A stretch of DNA of 63,313 nucleotides, the filler included, from Octopus bimaculoides (taxonomy: Eukaryota): the NCBI RefSeq assembly GCF_001194135.2. It is 6 parts of 6 records of this genome, joined end to end, with 100 filler letters (N's around TTAATTAATTAA, not from the genome) between each part and the next. Parts side by side here need not be neighbours in the genome. Positions count along the whole stretch, not along the records: positions 41,367 to 49,088 come from NW_026425249.1; 5 more parts are not named here. One strand, given 5' to 3'. A program made the translations under genes and the position numbers. Of this stretch, positions 41,367 through 49,132 are shown one piece after another; positions within the stretch are counted from its first letter, which is position 1, and each line of letters begins with the position of its first letter. Under the pieces are notes generated by a model, which did no database searches, was not told the DNA's origin, and saw nothing but the letters and a program-made list of their open reading frames with translations.

Positions 41367-41918
41367 CATGGTTCCGAGTTCAGTCCCACTGCGTGGCACC
41401 TTGAGCAAATGTTTTCTACTATAGCCTCGGGCCGACCAAAGCCTTGTGAGTGGATTTGGTAGACGGAAACTGAAAGAAGCCCGTCGTATATATATATGTA
41501 TATATATCTATATATGTGTGAGTAAAAATAAATACAAAAAAAAAGGGTTTTGTATGATCGTGTATAGAGGAATATATTATTTTATTTAAAAGAGTTCCAA
41601 CTCTGTCTGTTTTTTATGTTTTTTATTTATATTCTTGTAAAATTTATGTGGGATATAGAATATGGAATATGTCTTATTGAATATATGAAATATTGAGTGT
41701 TCAATATAAAGGATTAAATATATATAAAGGATTAAATATATATAAAGGATTAAATATATATATAAATATATAAAGGAGAATATGTATTTTCTATACCTTG
41801 TGGTATTTCATCATGGCCGGTATGACAGACTGTAACAGACTATGTATATATGTGCGTGTATATATTTGTGTGTATGTGTTTGTCCCCCTAGCATCGCTTG
41901 ACAACCGATGCTGGTGTG
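41367..41918 (+). mobile_element. Family A SINE, truncated at the inverted repeat
   Basis: The 5' half is intact. The 3' half stops at GACAACCGATGCTGGTGTG, where the consensus would continue TTTA. Confidence 0.75.
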
Positions 41919-42028
41919 CGACATTTAAGCTTGTTCATATATAAATCCACAAGCGCGCACACAGACACACACACACGTTCGGTCGCAAATTCACATTTAA
42001 GATTTTAGATGAGTCGCGAACCTTAATA
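41913..42028 (+). repeat. Left arm of a ~115-bp inverted repeat (partner 44463-44576)
   Basis: 41936-42028 is the exact reverse complement of the right arm apart from one CA unit. The outer ~23 bp has a few mismatches. Confidence 0.92.
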
Positions 42029-42076
42029 TTCATTAGACCAGGTCATCAGCAAAGCAATGAAGAAGAAAACAAGATA

Positions 42077-42612
42077 CGAGGGGATACCCCCAAAGTAATC
42101 GGAAACGTTCCCGTTGTAGTTCGGGCTTCCGCCGGTGAGAAGACACTTTATGCAACCCTCAGGCATCAGTCAGCCAACCGGCGTCGTCCAGTCGAGTCGT
42201 ACTGCTACATGTTGTGTCTTTTGCTTTGCAGTGTATCTTCCCTGTTCGTCGATTTTTTGCGATGGCTGAAACGATGGAACAGCGTGCTTCCGTGGAATTC
42301 TGTTCTCTGCTGAGGAAAAGGGCAGCCGAAACAGTTACCATGCTTCAAACAGCTTACAAGGACACTGCTATGAGCGAAACACAAGTTTACACAATTTTAG
42401 GAATGGTCAGTTGTCGTTTGAAAAGAAACAACGGAGGCGTCAGAAAGCATCACTTTGCAAGAGTTGCAGCGTTGCTTCGAACAGTGGAAAACGCGTCTGG
42501 GCCGATTCAGTGCTTCAAATGGAGAATATTTGAAGGCGATAAAAGTATAAACATGTAAAATTAAGTGATTATAATAACAGCAAAATTCTGGTTTCTTTTG
42601 GGTACCCCCTCG
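42077..42612 (+). mobile_element. Internally deleted mariner element (536 bp)
   Basis: TA-flanked TIRs CGAGGGG.TACCC..AA.G.AA.C. It encodes an N-terminal HTH remnant MAETMEQRASVEFCSLLRKRAAETVTMLQTAYKDTAMSETQVY. Confidence 0.88.
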
Positions 42613-42626
42613 TATATAAAAAGAAA

Positions 42627-43009
42627 GTGGAGGCGCAATGGCCCAGTGGTTAGGGCAGTGGACTCGCGGTCATAGGATCGCGGTTTCGATTCCCAGACCG
42701 GGCGTTGTGAGTGTTTATTGATCGAAAACACCTATAAGCACCACGAGGCTCCGGCAGGGGATGGTGGCGAACTCTGCTGTACTCTTTCACCACAACTTTC
42801 TCTCACTCTTACTTCCTGTTTCTGCTTTGTGCCTGTAATTCAAAGGGGGTCAGCCTTGTCACGCTGAATATCCCCCGAGAACTACGTTAAGGGTACACGT
42901 GTCTGTAGAGTACTCAGCCACTTGAACGTTAATTTCACGAGCAGGCTGTTCCGTTGATCGGATCAACTGGAACCCCTCGACGTCGTAAGCGACGGAGTGC
43001 CAACAACAA
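42627..43009 (+). mobile_element. tRNA-derived SINE (family C), full length
   Basis: A-box GGCCCAGTGGTTAGG, B-box GTTTCGATTCCC, and 3' end GATCGGATCAACTGGAACCC.CG..GTCG.AAGCGACGGAGTGCCAACAACAA. Confidence 0.88.
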
Positions 43010-43034
43010 TAAAAAGAAAAAACCAAGGACTTAC

Positions 43035-43454
43035 ATGTATTTTTGTTTCGGTTTGCAATAACTTGTCAGGTCGTCTTTGAACACACGTCGTATTTATAGT
43101 GACTACTTCAATAGTGTAGGGCACGAAATCATCCCGATACTCGCTCTTCAGGGCGGAAGCGTTGCCTGGAACCAACATATGGACCTTTTTGGTCGACTGT
43201 CCGCACTGGCCCCCTAAAGATTTGCAGCGGCCGTGGTATACATATTTCGGGTAGCGCGATTTATCGTCTGAACGATTTACCACGGTTTCACATGGGGTGA
43301 CCAAATGAGGCTTCTCTTCGTTGACATCCTCGAGTGAATTGTAAACAAATGCATCAAACTGTGTGCGATGGGCGTTGTACGATCTGATGAATAAGTCGGA
43401 TTTCACTTGCAGGTTGTTACAACACCACGTGATCAGAGTAAGCAACAGGATCAT
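43035..43454 (-). CDS. Secreted IL-17-like cystine-knot protein (140-codon coding exon)
   Basis: Pyrimidine tract plus CAG acceptor directly before the ATG at 43454, and a CAT|GTAAGT donor at 43035/43034 (phase 0/0, 420 nt open). Signal peptide MILLLTLITWCCNNLQVKS. The segment C-ETVVNRS-DDKSRYPKYVYHGRC-KSLG aligns without gaps to human IL-17A [27 protein letters not shown]. The C-terminal strand is YTIEVVTINTTCV. Confidence 0.72.
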
Positions 43455-43500
43455 CTGGATCGAGAAGAAACAACACATAGATGTACAATCTAATAATATG

Positions 43501-43531
<31 letters not shown>

Positions 43532-44462
43532 NNNNNNNNNNNNNNNNNNNNNNNNNNNNNNNNNNNNNNNNNNNNNNNNNNNNNNNNNNNNNNNNNNNNN
43601 NNNNNNNNNNNNNNNNNNNNNNNNNNNNNNNNNNNNNNNNNNNNNNNNNNNNNNNNNNNNNNNNNNNNNNNNNNNNNNNNNNNNNNNNNNNNNNNNNNNN
43701 NNNNNNNNNNNNNNNNNNNNNNNNNNNNNNNNNNNNNNNNNNNNNNNNNNNNNNNNNNNNNNNNNNNNNNNNNNNNNNNNNNNNNNNNNNNNNNNNNNNN
43801 NNNNNNNNNNNNNNNNNNNNNNNNNNNNNNNNNNNNNNNNNNNNNNNNNNNNNNNNNNNNNNNNNNNNNNNNNNNNNNNNNNNNNNNNNNNNNNNNNNNN
43901 NNNNNNNNNNNNNNNNNNNNNNNNNNNNNNNNNNNNNNNNNNNNNNNNNNNNNNNNNNNNNNNNNNNNNNNNNNNNNNNNNNNNNNNNNNNNNNNNNNNN
44001 NNNNNNNNNNNNNNNNNNNNNNNNNNNNNNNNNNNNNNNNNNNNNNNNNNNNNNNNNNNNNNNNNNNNNNNNNNNNNNNNNNNNNNNNNNNNNNNNNNNN
44101 NNNNNNNNNNNNNNNNNNNNNNNNNNNNNNNNNNNNNNNNNNNNNNNNNNNNNNNNNNNNNNNNNNNNNNNNNNNNNNNNNNNNNNNNNNNNNNNNNNNN
44201 NNNNNNNNNNNNNNNNNNNNNNNNNNNNNNNNNNNNNNNNNNNNNNNNNNNNNNNNNNNNNNNNNNNNNNNTATATATATATATATATATCAACGGAAGA
44301 CTGAAACAACATTTTGTATTATTCATTCTCCCTTACATCTGTTTCATTGCTTAATAGGAATTACATAGGTGCACATGTAGAAAATTATGTGAGGCATTTA
44401 TTAGTAATTCTTCTAGGATGAATAATACCAATTTTTCCGGTCTTCTTTTTTCTTTTCATTTG

Positions 44463-44576
44463 TATTAAGGTTCGCGACTCATCTAAAATCTTAAATGTGA
44501 ATTTGCGACCGAACGTGTGTGTGTCTGTGTGCGCGCTTGTGGATTTATATATGGACTAGCTTAAAAGTTGCACACC
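44463..44576 (-). repeat. Right arm of the ~115-bp inverted repeat (partner 41913-42028)
   Basis: TATTAAGGTTCGCGACTCATCTAAAATCTTAAATGTGAATTTGCGACCGAACGTGTG...GCGCGCTTGTGGATTTATATATG is the reverse complement of the left arm. Confidence 0.92.
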
Positions 44577-44830
44577 GTGCGGACTTTTGTAGAGGGCTGA
44601 TTGGGCCTGCGGCCCAAAACTGAAGGCACCTAAACAGCATGGCTGTAATGACTATATTTATGTGTGTTTGTCATTGTGCTTGTGTTTGTCGCCTCCCCCA
44701 CACACACCTTGACAGCCGATGTTGGTATGTTTATATCCCTTAGTAGTTCGGCAAAAGTGACCGATAGAATAAGTACTAGGTTGTGATCCAGCATGGCCAC
44801 AGTCAAATGACTGAAACGTATTAAACAAGG

Positions 44831-45217
44831 TGTTGGCACTCCGTCGCTTGCGACGACGAGGGTTCCAGTTGATCCGATCAACGGAACAGCCTGCTCGTGA
44901 AATTAACGTGCAAGTGGCTGAGCACTCCACAGACACGTGTACCCTTAACGTAGTTCTCAGGGGATATTCAGCGTGACACAGTGTGACAAGGCTGACCCTT
45001 TGAATTACAGGCACAACAGAAACAGGAAGAAAGAGTGAGAGAAAGTTGTGGTGGAAGAGTACAGCAGGGTTCGCCACCACCATCCCCTGCCGGAGCCTCG
45101 TGGAGCTTTTATGTGTTTTCGCTCAATAAACACTCACAACGCTCGGTCTGGGAATCGAAACCACGATCCTATGACCGCGAGTCCGCTGCCCTAACCACTG
45201 GGCCATTGCGCCTCCAC
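44831..45217 (-). mobile_element. Family C SINE, full length, inverted relative to 42627-43009
   Basis: The reverse complement aligns end to end with the + copy, about 90% identical by eye. Confidence 0.88.
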
Positions 45218-45807
45218 ATTAAACAATAAAAGAATAAAAGAATAAAAGATTGTACACATGTAAAACGAGAGAAAGGAAAGACTGAAGATATTCAGTTTAA
45301 TGAATGATGTATATGTATGTGTGTAATCATTTTAGCTGTCATTGGTAAAGTTGTTTAGCCCCAGGTCAGTCTTGACCCAGACAGACCTATGATCAAAGAT
45401 GTTCCAGATGTGACAAATCCTGTCTTTTATTCCGGCATAGTGTATCTAGGACTACATTATCTAATGTGTCCTTCCTTGTTGTGGTTTAGCCCCAGGTCAG
45501 TCCTGATCCAGAAGACTTGTGATCAAAGGTGTTCCAACTGTGACCATCCTGTCTAGGACTACATTATCTATCTCGTTGTTGTTAAGCCCTCCATTTGTGC
45601 TGGTCCAACACATCTATGATGAAAGAGGAATTACTTTGTTGTTGTTAAGCCTGCGCGCGTGAGCGAATCAGTCCTGGGGTCGATTTGTTCGACTAAAGCG
45701 GTGCTCCCGCTTGGCCGCAGTCAAATGACTGAAACAAGTAAAATGATAAAATACATAACGTGTGTATGTATGTGTGCATGTATGTGTGTACATATATATG
45801 TGTGTGT

Positions 45808-46120
45808 GTGGAGGCGCAATGTCCCAGATGTTATGGCAGCGGACTCGCGGTTTCGATTCCCAGACCGGGCGTTGTGAGTGTTTATTGAGCGAATACACAT
45901 AAAAAGCTCCACGAGGCTCCGGCAGGGGGTGGGGGATGGAGACCCCTATTGTACTCTTTCGCCCCAACTTTCTCCCTGTTTCTTGAGTAACGCTGCAGTG
46001 GACTGGCGTCCCGTCCAGCTGGGGGTGGGGAACACATACGCCATAGAAACCGGGAAACCGGGCCCATGAGCCTGGATAGGCTTTGAAAGGGCGCATAAAT
46101 AAATAAATAAATAAATAAAT
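45808..46120 (+). mobile_element. Family C SINE head with a different 3' tail
   Basis: Same GGAGGCGCAATG head and CCACGAGGCTCCGGCAGGGG core, but the tail is GACTGGCGTCCCGTCCAGC...GAAAGGGCGCAT(AAAT)n. That tail is also seen at 62130-62275. Confidence 0.75.
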
Positions 46121-46558
46121 GTATGTACGTATGCATGTATGTATGGGTTCTTTTTCTCCTATTTTTAATTATGAGAAGTGGGTTTCTAACAAACAAACAA
46201 AGCTTGATCTTTGAAATGTGATAAAAATAAATTCTCATTTTGAAATTGAGAAAAGTCTTGCATTTCTTTATTGTTCGGCTTACAGATTATATTTGTAATT
46301 TGCGAGTTAGTTATTCGAATTCTTTTTCTGCCAACCCCAGCTTTTCGAGTTTGTCACTTATATATTTACTAACGAAATCGAATGCACCCATGGTATGAAT
46401 GTGAATTTGTAATCTGGGTATAGAAGCTGGATTTTCGAAGAGATAATCCCATCAGCAGGGAAGCTGATCTCCATGATGGTGCATACTTTTTCTTATCTCT
46501 TTCTCTTTCTCAAAACGATAGTTTTGATGAGAATGTTCCATCAACATTCCTTTTATTG

Positions 46559-46965
46559 AAGGCGGTGAGCTGGCAGAATCGTTAGCATGCCGGGCGAAAT
46601 GCTTAGCGGTATTTCGTCTGCCACTGCGTTCTGAGTTCAAATTCCGCCGAGGTCGACTTTGCCTTTCATCCTTTCGGGGTCGATAAATTAAGTACCAGTT
46701 ACGCACTGGGGTCGATATAATCGACTTAATCCGTTTGTCTGTCCTTGTTTGTCCCCTCTGTGTGTAGCCCCCTTGTGGGCAGTAAAGAAATAGGTATTTC
46801 GTCTGTCTTTGCGTTCTGAGTTCAAATTCCGCCGAGGTCGGCTTTGCCTTTCATCCTTTCGGGGGTCGATAAATTAGGTACCAGTTGCATACTGGGATCG
46901 ATCTAATCGACTTGCCCCTCCCCCAAAATTTCGGGCCTTGTACCTAGAGTAGAAAAGAATATTCC
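46559..46965 (+). mobile_element. Two tandem family B SINEs (full copy plus 5'-truncated copy with an alternative tail)
   Basis: TTCTGAGTTCAAATTCCGCCGAGGTCG.CTTTGCCTTTCATCCTTTCGGGG occurs twice. Confidence 0.85.
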
Positions 46966-47587
46966 TTGTGTTGCTATGCATATATGTGTGTGCGTGTGTG
47001 TATGTATGTATGTATGTGGCATGATGATCATTGTGGAACCTCGCTGACCCAGGGCTAAAATCTACAGCAAGAACAACATCAAATTACATACGATGAAAAG
47101 AAAGGAAAAAAAGAACGAAAAGAAATGTCTTATACATACCTTATTTCTTGACATTGTCATCATCAAATATATATATATAATATAATATAATATATCAATG
47201 TATATATATATATATACCGGTGTTTGGTAGGGAACGGCCACGGGAATAGAATTTTAAAGACGAACGGATCAACAGTCAATTCTGATATAAGATATATATA
47301 TATTTGTGTGTATGTGTGTTGATGTTGCCGGCGTCGGATATAGGAAAAACCTGATGTAGTTAGGTTTAAATGGTTACATAAATTCTAATGTGTGTTACAG
47401 ATTTCTTATGCATTAACATATATTTTATATAGATATAAATATATATTTTCATGTATCTATATATATATATTAAATTTATATAAATATATTTGTGAAGGAA
47501 AACAAAGAGACAGTGTGTGTGTGTATTTTGTATAAATTAAAGCGGTGTTAAAGTCGTCTGCTAGCAGCGAATGTGTGTATATATGTA

Positions 47588-47622
<35 letters not shown>

Positions 47623-48201: not shown

Positions 48202-48240
<39 letters not shown>

Positions 48241-48305
48241 TGTGTTTGTGTGTGTGTGTGTGTCTGTAGATTGCGCAACTTCCGCTCCTTTGATTCAACA
48301 ATAAT

Positions 48306-48377
<72 letters not shown>

Positions 48378-48747
48378 TACTACTACTACTACTATTACAA
48401 TAAACAAGTACTTACTTTTGGAATGTGTACTTACGGATGGGTGTACGTACGAAAATCTATGAATGTATTACACATGCATANNNNNNNNNNNNNNNNNNNN
48501 NNNNNNNNNNNNNNNNNNNNNNNNNNTGTGTGTGTGTGTGTTGGGGGGGGGGGGGTCGGAGTTGTTTGTTAAATATAAAACTTCCTGTTTTTTTATCGTT
48601 TACGATTGCCGGACGATAACTCTTCGCAGAACATAAAAATAGATGTACATCGAAACTTAGATGTATACATGTGCACATTATCTACGTATCTGTCTATGAA
48701 TGTCTGAGTGTCCACCCACACCTAAATAATGTGAGTGTGTGTCTTCC

Positions 48748-48786
<39 letters not shown>

Positions 48787-49132
48787 AGGCGTGCGTACAC
48801 ACACACACACACACGCATACATACACGCTCACATACACGCGCATACAGATCAATGCACATATACCTCACACATAACTCCCCCACACACCACACACACAAC
48901 ACGCACATACACGCACACACAACATACCCGCGCACATGTATCACGGTCCGATGTTCCTGAAACAGCTGTTAAGTATCCCACCCGTGAGGGATCGATGCTA
49001 AATGTATCGAAAAAATTGTTGTGATTAAATGCTCATATCTTCCATCTTCCATCTTTCGTTCACCGTATATATATATATATATATATATNNNNNNNNNNNN
49101 NNNNNNNNNNNNNNNNNNNNNNNNNNNNNNNN

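What the first reader, a model, noticed from the sequence alone, without database searches (positions are those of the whole stretch)
41913..44576. IL-17-like exon enclosed in a near-perfect ~115-bp inverted repeat: candidate gene-carrying cassette
Seen: arms 41913-42028 and 44463-44576 are reverse complements, identical over ~92 bp except one CA unit, and so much more similar than the SINE copies here. They bracket a mariner, a SINE and the entire coding exon. The left arm truncates a family A SINE, and no TSD is evident. Established knowledge: octopus IL-17-like genes are expanded in a tandem cluster, and foldback/Pack-type elements can carry host exons. Inference: either a TIR-bounded unit that captured or mobilised a cytokine exon (a possible mechanism for IL-17-like expansion), a recent local inversion-duplication scar, or two insertions of a young repeat.
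Basis: partly seen in the sequence, partly recalled or inferred. Interest (0 to 1): 0.7.

Follow-up and report, generated by a model that had tools for sequence, protein, structure and literature searches.

The report
Inverted repeat flanking an octopus IL-17-like exon
A real 116-base inverted repeat sits on either side of the middle exon of an octopus IL-17-like cytokine gene, but it looks like an ordinary local duplication scar or a pair of short repeats in the introns, not a mobile element carrying a gene.

Summary
The piece is Octopus bimaculoides unplaced scaffold LGKD02130388.1. The inverted repeat is real and lies at the stated places: 41913-42028 versus the reverse complement of 44463-44576. 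It matches at 110 of 116 columns, and the inner 92 nt are identical except for one CA unit.

Three corrections apply:
- **Different contigs.** The arms lie on contigs joined across the 740-N gap. Both gap edges are (TA)n, so enclosure, spacing and orientation rest on scaffolding.
- **Similar age to the SINEs.** The arms have 3.5% substitutions and the local SINE pair 4.5%. All four substitutions fall in the outer 23 nt.
- **Not the whole coding sequence.** Relatives have two IL-17 domains in at least three exons. This is the middle exon, with the same splice boundaries, so the arms lie in its flanking introns.

The cassette reading is not supported: there is no target-site duplication, no homology beyond the arms, no other copy in the 22-kb scaffold and no near-identical parent gene.

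My best reading is a local inverted templated copy joined to a truncated SINE through GGTGTG microhomology (confidence 0.4). Two copies of an unknown dispersed repeat, or a scaffolding error, remain open. Genome-wide copy number could not be tested. Interest is low.

The parts
41913..42028 (+). Left arm of the inverted repeat (116 nt). It lies downstream of the exon, in the presumed intron 2 or 3' flank of the minus-strand gene.
44463..44576 (-). Right arm of the inverted repeat (114 nt, one CA unit shorter). It lies in predicted intron 1, on a different contig from the left arm.
41830..41918 (+). 5' part of a SINE-A copy that stops at ...GATGCTGGTGTG. Its last 6 nt (GGTGTG) are also the first 6 nt of the arm homology, so the junction has microhomology.
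   Evidence: alignment to the copy at 44643-44722. (the second copy continues GGTATGTTTATATCCC...). (the 3' part of the SINE is not found after either arm).
42075..42615 (+). Internally deleted mariner-like element with terminal inverted repeats and TA on both sides.
   Evidence: TIRs 42074-42089 / 42600-42615, 94%. (HTH_48 E 0.068, below the cut-off). (frames).
42624..43022 (+). SINE-B copy with an A-rich tail. It ends about 7-12 nt from the exon's splice donor. The read-through ORF of the exon terminates inside it.
43035..43454 (-). IL-17-like exon. It carries the ATG, the signal peptide and the first IL-17-like domain. The acceptor is ccag|ATG and the donor is CAT|gtaagt.
43532..44271 (.). 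Assembly gap (740 N), bordered by (TA)n at about 43507-43531 and 44272-44290. It lies in predicted intron 1, and no exon crosses it.
44643..44830 (+). Second SINE-A copy. It begins about 65 nt outside the right arm and is on the same strand as the first, so it is not part of the inverted repeat.
44831..45220 (-). SINE-B copy inverted relative to 42624-43005 (91.1% identity). The order is arm, SINE ... arm, SINE, so the two repeat pairs do not form one palindromic duplication.
   Evidence: I13, I14, I16..
47140..47163 (-). Predicted exon 1 of RefSeq model LOC128251557 (MMTMSRNK, donor AAG|gtatgt). It lies outside the inverted repeat. Relatives start at the ATG of the next exon, so this may be a 5'UTR exon or a prediction artefact.
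   Evidence: No homology to a relative's 5'UTR.

Best explanation
The two arms are a genuine 116-nt inverted duplicate. They lie in the non-coding DNA on either side of the middle exon of an otherwise ordinary IL-17-like gene with at least three exons and two domains. They are not the ends of a mobile cassette.

**Most likely origin (inferred).** A single local repair or replication event, either a templated insertion or a template switch, copied about 116 nt of intron-1 sequence (the right arm, as source). The copy was placed in inverted orientation at a break inside a SINE. Before the mariner and SINE-B insertions are counted, that SINE lay only about 65 nt downstream of the exon.
- The join used the GGTGTG that the SINE and the source share.
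- The SINE's 3' part was lost in the event.
- The first ~23 nt synthesised picked up the four substitutions.

**Consequence (inferred).** The likely outcome is neutral. If the gene is transcribed, the pre-mRNA would carry a near-perfect ~110-bp intramolecular duplex bracketing a 420-nt exon. That geometry elsewhere favours exon circularisation or skipping and ADAR editing.
For: **Shown**
- The repeat is exactly 116 nt. No homology continues on either side, inner or outer.
- There are only two copies in the 22-kb scaffold, about 2.4 kb apart.
- The left arm abuts a 3'-truncated SINE-A. The SINE's continuation is found neither after the left arm nor after the right arm, so this is a breakpoint rather than a clean insertion.
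- GGTGTG at the junction belongs both to the SINE (the second copy has GGTATG at that position) and to the right arm.
- All four substitutions lie within 23 nt of that junction. If they were placed at random, (23/114)^4 is about 0.002.
- There is no TSD.
- The exon's acceptor and donor sit at the same positions as in relatives. An mRNA contig and a genomic contig of a relative are identical exactly from the ATG to the donor. Relatives carry a second IL-17 domain in a further exon. The exon therefore sits in normal gene context.
- The arms would pair as RNA at -188.8 kcal/mol, against -49.3 +/- 3.4 for shuffled partners.

**From established knowledge**
- Microhomology-mediated template switching produces short inverted copies of nearby sequence (MMBIR model, PMC2621351, listed).
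- That such synthesis is error-prone near junctions is my own recollection (Carvalho et al. 2013, Nat Genet). I did not read it here.
Against: - The copy number of the arm in the octopus genome is unknown. No tool here holds that genome, so a dispersed repeat family cannot be excluded.
- The microhomology is only 5-6 nt, and the SINE sequence at that position rests on one other in-scaffold copy.
- The second junction (TTAATA|TTCATT) cannot be analysed because the ancestral sequence is unknown.
- The arms lie on different contigs across a gap, so orientation and spacing rest on scaffolding and on a gene model whose evidence I could not see.
- The clustering of substitutions could equally reflect gene conversion of the inner part between two older copies.
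Confidence: 0.4

Rival explanations
1. The arms are two independent copies of an uncharacterised short dispersed repeat, or a fixed fragment of a larger transposable element. They happen to lie in opposite orientation in the two introns.
For: - Both copies have the same sharp boundaries.
- Their overall substitution level (3.5%) resembles that of the SINE-B pair in the same piece (4.5%), so the age is comparable.
- The region is saturated with repeats: at least three SINE families and a mariner in 6 kb.
- The arm contains a CA microsatellite core, like other octopus repeat junctions (D17).
Against: - There is no third copy in about 13 kb of assembled scaffold, nor in about 6 kb of relatives' contigs.
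- For two copies to fall within 2.5 kb by chance, the family must be very abundant, on the order of 10^4-10^5 copies in 2.7 Gb (my estimate).
- The arm has no hairpin or TIR structure of its own (z -1.3) and no poly-A or TSD.
- The inner 92 nt have 0 substitutions where about 4 would be expected at the SINE rate (P about 0.02).
Confidence: 0.3
2. This is a scaffolding or assembly artefact. The 3.35-kb contig that carries the right arm (44272-47622) is mis-oriented or misplaced, so the arms do not really enclose the exon as an inverted pair.
For: - The arms are on different contigs of a heavily gapped Illumina scaffold: 8 gaps totalling about 9 kb in 22.3 kb.
- The scaffold is unplaced in the v2 assembly.
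- The contig has self-complementary (TA)n at both ends, so its sequence cannot orient it.
- Both contigs carry SINE-B copies that could confuse read pairs.
Against: - The RefSeq model joins an exon on that contig to the IL-17-like exon on the same strand, with consensus donor and acceptor.
- Relatives do have an upstream exon spliced exactly at the ATG.
- The two arm sequences are themselves each embedded in unique flanks inside contigs, so both copies exist somewhere.
Confidence: 0.12
3. This is a micro-inversion scar. A ~2.4-kb segment containing the exon was inverted by staggered breaks, duplicating the 116 nt between the nicks as an inverted repeat at the two ends.
For: - An inverted duplication flanking a segment, without TSD, is the signature described for Drosophila inversions (PMC1885836, listed).
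- The arm boundaries are sharp.
Against: - Inverting the segment would put the exon on the opposite strand from predicted exon 1. The present arrangement is the co-oriented, spliceable one.
- The model does not explain the truncated SINE or why substitutions cluster at one end.
Confidence: 0.08
4. The arms are the terminal inverted repeats of a non-autonomous DNA transposon (Pack-type or foldback-like) that carries the IL-17-like exon and could spread it.
For: - The arms are long and near-identical, their outermost 7 nt are identical, and they bracket a host exon.
- IL-17 genes are expanded in this species (PMC8353272).
Against: - No TSD of 2-12 nt exists at any offset, except palindromes internal to the arms.
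- Substitutions lie in the subterminal region, while the inner part is identical.
- The exon keeps the family's native splice boundaries and has a co-oriented upstream exon outside the arms.
- It is only one exon of a two-domain gene.
- No close copy of the exon exists anywhere in the protein databases.
- No other arm copy is found in the scaffold.
Confidence: 0.07

Closest known systems
Templated insertions and template-switch inverted duplications (FoSTeS/MMBIR, polymerase-theta end joining)
   Same: A short inverted copy of sequence from a few kb away. There is microhomology at the junction, a deletion at the acceptor site (the SINE's 3' part is lost), no TSD, and base changes clustered next to the junction.
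   Different: Only one junction shows microhomology that can be read. No ancestral or empty allele is available. The event is inferred from one haploid reference scaffold with a gap between the two copies.
Pack-type gene-carrying DNA transposons (Pack-MULE, Pack-CACTA) and foldback elements
   Same: Long inverted termini bracket a fragment of a host gene, together with nested transposable elements.
   Different: There is no TSD, no evidence of other copies and no parent gene copy. The exon sits in its native splice context, and the most diverged part of the arms is near the termini.
Reverse-complementary intronic repeats flanking circularised exons (for example, inverted Alu pairs in human circRNA loci)
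   Same: About 110 bp of near-perfect complementarity sits in the two introns, roughly 1 kb on each side of a single 420-nt exon. The predicted duplex is -189 kcal/mol.
   Different: No transcript data were available. Expression of the gene, intron 2 and any back-splice junction are untested.
Staggered-break inversions with inverted duplications at the breakpoints (Drosophila; PMC1885836)
   Same: An inverted duplicate flanks a segment, without TSD.
   Different: The scale is far smaller (2.4 kb). An inversion would disrupt the exon 1 to exon 2 orientation that the present arrangement preserves.
Molluscan expanded IL-17 family (Pfam PF06083; O. bimaculoides 31-36 genes, PMC8353272)
   Same: The exon product aligns to the IL17 profile over positions 8-77 of 81. 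It shares the SRYP motif and four invariant cysteines with relatives that pass Pfam's threshold.
   Different: The window protein itself scores below Pfam's cut-off (14.5 against 24 bits). It lacks two cysteines present in its relatives and is at most 37% identical to any other protein. Its second-domain exon is missing from the assembly. No tandem neighbours are visible on this scaffold.

Membership tests
TIR DNA transposon carrying host sequence (Pack-type / foldback) | Terminal inverted repeats | tested here: met
   116/114-nt arms, 94.8% identical.
TIR DNA transposon carrying host sequence (Pack-type / foldback) | Target-site duplication directly outside the termini | tested here: not met
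   The scan covered k = 2-12 and boundary offsets -15 to +30. Only palindromes internal to the arms (TTAA, AGCT, ATAT) appear, and they are trivial in an inverted repeat. The outer flanks CCGATGCT and GTGCGGAC do not match.
TIR DNA transposon carrying host sequence (Pack-type / foldback) | Several genomic copies sharing the same termini | not testable with these tools
   No octopus genome collection is available. There are only 2 copies in the 22-kb scaffold and 0 hits in the viral, prokaryote and metagenome collections. The peptide bait failed together with its control.
TIR DNA transposon carrying host sequence (Pack-type / foldback) | The captured fragment is a copy of a parent gene elsewhere | tested here: not met
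   The best non-self protein is 37% identical. The exon retains native acceptor and donor positions and has a co-oriented upstream exon outside the arms.
Template-switch / templated-insertion inverted duplication | Microhomology at the breakpoint junction | tested here: met
   GGTGTG is shared by the SINE-A end and the arm start. This is shown at one junction only and is 5-6 nt long.
Template-switch / templated-insertion inverted duplication | The source sequence lies nearby and homology is confined to the copied tract | tested here: met
   The second copy lies 2.4 kb away (this depends on the gap estimate). No flank homology was found.
Template-switch / templated-insertion inverted duplication | An allele or orthologue lacking the copy exists (empty site) | not testable with these tools
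   No other octopus assembly or reads are reachable. The look-ups found nothing.
Interleukin-17 family (Pfam PF06083) | Match to the family profile above the curated cut-off | tested here: inconclusive
   The window protein scores 14.5-14.6 bits, E 0.044-0.048, below the cut-off of 24. Its homologue P0002 (E 1.4e-14 to the window protein) scores 30.7 bits, above the cut-off. All 7 subfamily members hit IL17 at E <= 0.1.
Interleukin-17 family (Pfam PF06083) | Conserved cystine-knot cysteines | tested here: met
   C63, C85, C92 and C132 are invariant across the 7 aligned relatives. The top 21 PDB profile hits are all IL-17A, though weak at E 0.08-0.6. No structure was predicted.
Intronic complementary repeats that drive exon circularisation | Complementary sequences in both introns flanking the exon | tested here: met
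   The arms lie about 1 kb upstream of the acceptor and about 1 kb downstream of the donor, with cofold energy -188.8 kcal/mol. This is conditional on the scaffold join and on a downstream exon existing.
Intronic complementary repeats that drive exon circularisation | Back-spliced transcripts | not testable with these tools
   No RNA-seq access. No transcript of this gene appears in the protein collections.

The most novel reading that the evidence does not exclude
The arms are the termini of a low-copy, TSD-less or TSD-eroded inverted-repeat element that carries a single IL-17-like domain exon with its splice sites. Such units would have helped shuffle or multiply IL-17 domain exons in octopus. 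This could also explain the two-domain architecture of this subfamily.
Probability: 0.06. Interest if true: 0.7.

Novelty: new member of a known kind. Interest (0 to 1): 0.2.

Why it matters
If the cassette reading were true, it would give a concrete mechanism for the IL-17 expansion in cephalopods and a rare animal example of exon capture by a DNA element.

The evidence points instead to an ordinary small structural scar in repeat-rich intronic DNA, so the finding matters little for that question.

Three modest points remain useful:
- This IL-17-like subfamily has two IL-17 domains in separate exons, and the RefSeq model here is truncated by the assembly.
- The repeat creates a long intronic duplex around one exon. 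That could be checked for circular RNA or editing in a species known for heavy RNA editing.
- It is a reminder that inverted repeats spanning assembly gaps in this Illumina scaffold cannot be taken at face value.

Tried and rejected
1. **Genome-wide copy number through proteins.**
   - I built a six-frame peptide bait from both arms, plus a SINE-B control peptide, and ran it in the search for homologous proteins.
   - There were 8000 candidates and none scored. The control also failed, so the result is uninformative.
2. **Exact 25-mer of the arm core.** It has no hit in viral, prokaryote-genome or metagenome collections. That is expected, since none of them holds octopus DNA.
3. **Independent assemblies of the locus by exact-protein look-up.** The read-through exon ORF, the O. 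vulgaris relative P0002, a 141-aa ORF next to the right arm and the mariner ORF are all not on record.
4. **Logan contigs of relatives**.
   - I checked only the first (L002) for the arm, and it had none.
   - All of them are short, 1.1-2.9 kb.
   - They were still useful for establishing gene structure.
5. **The arm as a self-folding MITE.** Rejected: DNA fold z-score is -1.3.
6. **One element inserted into a single SINE-A.** This would have made the right outer flank the SINE's continuation. Rejected: the alignment is no better than shuffles.
7. **One larger palindromic duplication comprising arm plus SINE-B.** Rejected: the order is arm, SINE ... arm, SINE rather than mirror order, and no flank homology exists.
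8. **Haplotig explanation.** Rejected: homology stops at 116 nt on both sides.
9. **Verifying predicted exon 1 by homology to a relative's 5'UTR.** Not significant.
10. **tRNA scan of the SINE heads.** Nothing was found.
Full report
**What the piece is.** The exon product matches one database protein exactly: 'uncharacterized protein LOC128251557, partial [Octopus bimaculoides]' (P0001). Its gene lies on the unplaced 22.7-kb scaffold LGKD02130388.1 of GCA_001194135.2, fetched as L001. Window position = 55295 minus L001 position.
- The scaffold has eight gaps.
- The finding's piece is bounded by gaps of 2662 and 1016 N.
- The piece consists of contigs 41367-43531, 44272-47622, 48202-48480 and 48527-49088.

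**The gap, tested first.**
- The 740-N gap at 43532-44271 has (TA)n on both edges.
- No exon or genuine reading frame crosses it. The long 'ORFs' across it are runs of X.
- It lies in intron 1 of the RefSeq model.
- The left arm and the exon are on one contig, and the right arm is on the next.
- (TA)n is its own reverse complement, and the second contig has (TA)n at both ends. The sequence therefore says nothing about that contig's orientation.
- The only support visible here is that the RefSeq model joins an 8-codon exon (47140-47163, donor AAG|gtatgt) to the exon at 43035-43454 (acceptor ccag|ATG) on the same strand.
- I could not verify that first exon by homology to a relative's 5'UTR.

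**The observation.** The inverted repeat is real and lies where stated.
- 41913-42028 pairs with 44576-44463 (I15 and I17).
- It matches at 110 of 116 columns (94.8%, E 2e-48).
- The inner 92 nt are identical except for one CA unit. The four substitutions are at 41920, 41923, 41932 and 41935.
- With simple repeats masked, the longest exact inverted match is 52 nt, against 10-14 nt in shuffles.
- Homology stops sharply at both ends. Neither inner nor outer flanks align better than shuffled sequence, apart from the TA microsatellite.

The arms bracket three features:
- a mariner-like deleted element, with TIRs at 42074-42089 and 42600-42615 and TA flanks and a weak HTH_48 hit at E 0.068;
- a SINE at 42624-43005;
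- the exon.

**Corrections to the observation.**
- *Age of the arms.* The arms are not much younger than the SINEs overall. They carry 4 substitutions in 114 nt (3.5%), against 17 in about 380 nt (4.5%) for the SINE pair 42624-43005 / 45220-44831. What is unusual is the distribution: all four lie in the outer 23 nt, and random placement gives about 0.002.
- *No single palindrome.* The two repeat pairs run arm, SINE ... arm, SINE, not in mirror order. They are therefore not one palindromic duplication.

**The exon and its gene.**
- *Family membership.*
  - The product hits Pfam IL17 only weakly (14.5 bits, E 0.048, cut-off 24).
  - An exhaustive HMMER scan found just two real relatives: P0002 of O. 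vulgaris (37% identity, E 1.4e-14) and P0004. Two further hits are low-complexity proteins.
  - P0002 passes the Pfam cut-off at 30.7 bits.
  - A profile search added four more relatives. All seven subfamily members hit IL17.
  - The top 21 PDB matches of the profile are all IL-17A, although weak. 'IL-17-like' therefore stands, through transitive homology.
- *Two domains.* The alignment shows that full-length relatives (P0002, P0008, P0009) carry a second IL-17 domain after the part encoded here.
- *Exon boundaries.*
  - Comparing a spliced transcript contig (L005) with a genomic contig (L006) of the same relative gives the exon limits.
  - The two are identical exactly from the ATG to ...TCTCGG. 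In the genomic contig the ATG is preceded by ...ttttgtag, and ...TCTCGG is followed by gt.
  - A second genomic relative shows the same pattern.
  - The window exon has the same boundaries.
- *Family structure.* The family therefore has a 5' exon, an exon carrying the ATG and domain 1, and a domain-2 exon. The window exon is the middle one. Its domain-2 exon is not in the assembled part of the scaffold, which explains the 'partial' label.
- *Other differences.* The window protein lacks two cysteines that its relatives share.
- *No cluster visible.* The scaffold holds only this one IL-17-like exon, so no tandem cluster can be seen here.
- *Background.* O. bimaculoides does have 31-36 IL-17 genes, often in tandem (PMC8353272).

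**Testing the cassette reading.** Five results speak against a TIR-bounded mobile unit:
1. There is no target-site duplication for any length from 2 to 12 nt at any plausible boundary.
2. The substitutions lie just inside the termini, while the interior is identical.
3. The exon sits in the family's native splice context, with a co-oriented upstream exon outside the arms. It is only one exon of a two-domain gene.
4. No close copy of the exon exists in the protein collections.
5. No further arm copy occurs in the scaffold or in the one relative's contig I checked (L002).

The arm alone does not fold like a MITE.

**What it most likely is.**
- The left arm abuts a SINE-A copy cut off at ...GATGCTGGTGTG.
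- A second SINE-A copy continues with GGTATGTTTATATCCC... at that point.
- The missing 3' part of the SINE follows neither arm.
- The left junction is therefore a breakpoint with loss of sequence, not a clean insertion.
- Its GGTGTG belongs to both the SINE and the arm, giving 5-6 nt of microhomology.
- Combined with the nearby source copy, the strict 116-nt tract, the absence of a TSD and the substitutions clustered next to the junction, this fits a local templated copy made by template switching or end joining (MMBIR model, PMC2621351).
- With the later mariner and SINE-B removed, the copy lies only about 65 nt from the exon's donor.
- I hold this at 0.4.

**Rival readings.**
- Two copies of an uncharacterised dispersed repeat: 0.3.
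- A scaffolding error: 0.12.
- A staggered-break micro-inversion (PMC1885836): 0.08. The exon 1 to exon 2 co-orientation weakens it.
- The transposon cassette: 0.07.

**Consequence.** If the gene is transcribed, the arms would form a near-perfect duplex in the pre-mRNA (-188.8 kcal/mol, against -49.3 +/- 3.4 for shuffled partners). The duplex would lie about 1 kb on each side of a 420-nt exon. From established knowledge of circular RNA biogenesis and ADAR substrates, that geometry favours back-splicing, exon skipping or editing. This is inference only.

**What could not be done.**
- A peptide-bait workaround failed together with its positive control.
- Collection scans were empty, as expected.
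- Exact-protein look-ups for independent assemblies found nothing.

**Verdict.** The repeat is real and the exon is IL-17-like. The enclosure rests on a scaffold join, the exon is not a whole gene, and the mobile-cassette idea is not supported. This is an ordinary small structural feature in repeat-rich intronic DNA, and interest is low.

Noticed in passing
window 43035-43454; relatives P0002, P0008, P0009; loci L005 and L006: This IL-17-like subfamily has two IL-17 domains encoded by separate exons. The RefSeq model here (148 aa, 'partial') stops at the donor after domain 1, and the domain-2 exon is absent from the assembled scaffold. It may lie in the 2662-N gap or on another scaffold.
   Followed up: yes
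window 47140-47163 (minus strand): Predicted exon 1 encodes only MMTMSRNK. Relatives start at the methionine that opens the next exon. This is probably a 5'UTR exon with an upstream ATG, or a prediction artefact.
   Followed up: partly
window 43035-43454, product residues about 105-120 of P0001: The window protein lacks two cysteines that all six relatives share (…C…C.Y becomes …NASAL…VPY) and has a 5-residue insertion there. It may be a diverging or decaying family member.
   Followed up: no
window 42624-43022: A SINE-B copy is inserted about 7-12 nt downstream of the exon's GTAAGT donor. If the donor is not used, the reading frame runs 23 codons further and stops inside the SINE tail.
   Followed up: partly
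window 42075-42615: An internally deleted mariner-like element of about 540 nt. It has 16-25-nt terminal inverted repeats, TA on both sides, and remnants of the transposase N-terminal HTH and C-terminus in different frames.
   Followed up: partly
window 45807-45984, 46608-46727 / 46793-46913, and 45350-45425 / 45481-45554: A third, older SINE-B fragment (80-82% identity to the other two). There is also a tandem partial dimer of another SINE family (90.9%) and a 76-nt direct repeat (85.5%). Repeat density is very high throughout.
   Followed up: no
window 41704-41762: Three exact tandem copies of an 18-nt AT-rich unit (ATATAAAGGATTAAATAT).
   Followed up: no
window 48307-48394 and 48543-48555: A long (ACT)n trinucleotide microsatellite of about 29 units. 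A run of 13 G lies close to a 46-N gap, separated from it by a short (TG)n stretch. The poly-G next to a gap may be a sequencing or assembly artefact.
   Followed up: no
L005 1-20: The Logan transcript contig of the relative P0008 begins with an Illumina adapter fragment (GACGTGTGCTCTTCCGATCT), so its first 20 nt are not biological.
   Followed up: no
protein hits P0003 and P0005: Two significant-looking hits of the exhaustive protein search are long, highly repetitive low-complexity proteins (2990 aa and 635 aa). They match only short stretches and are spurious for family assignment.
   Followed up: partly
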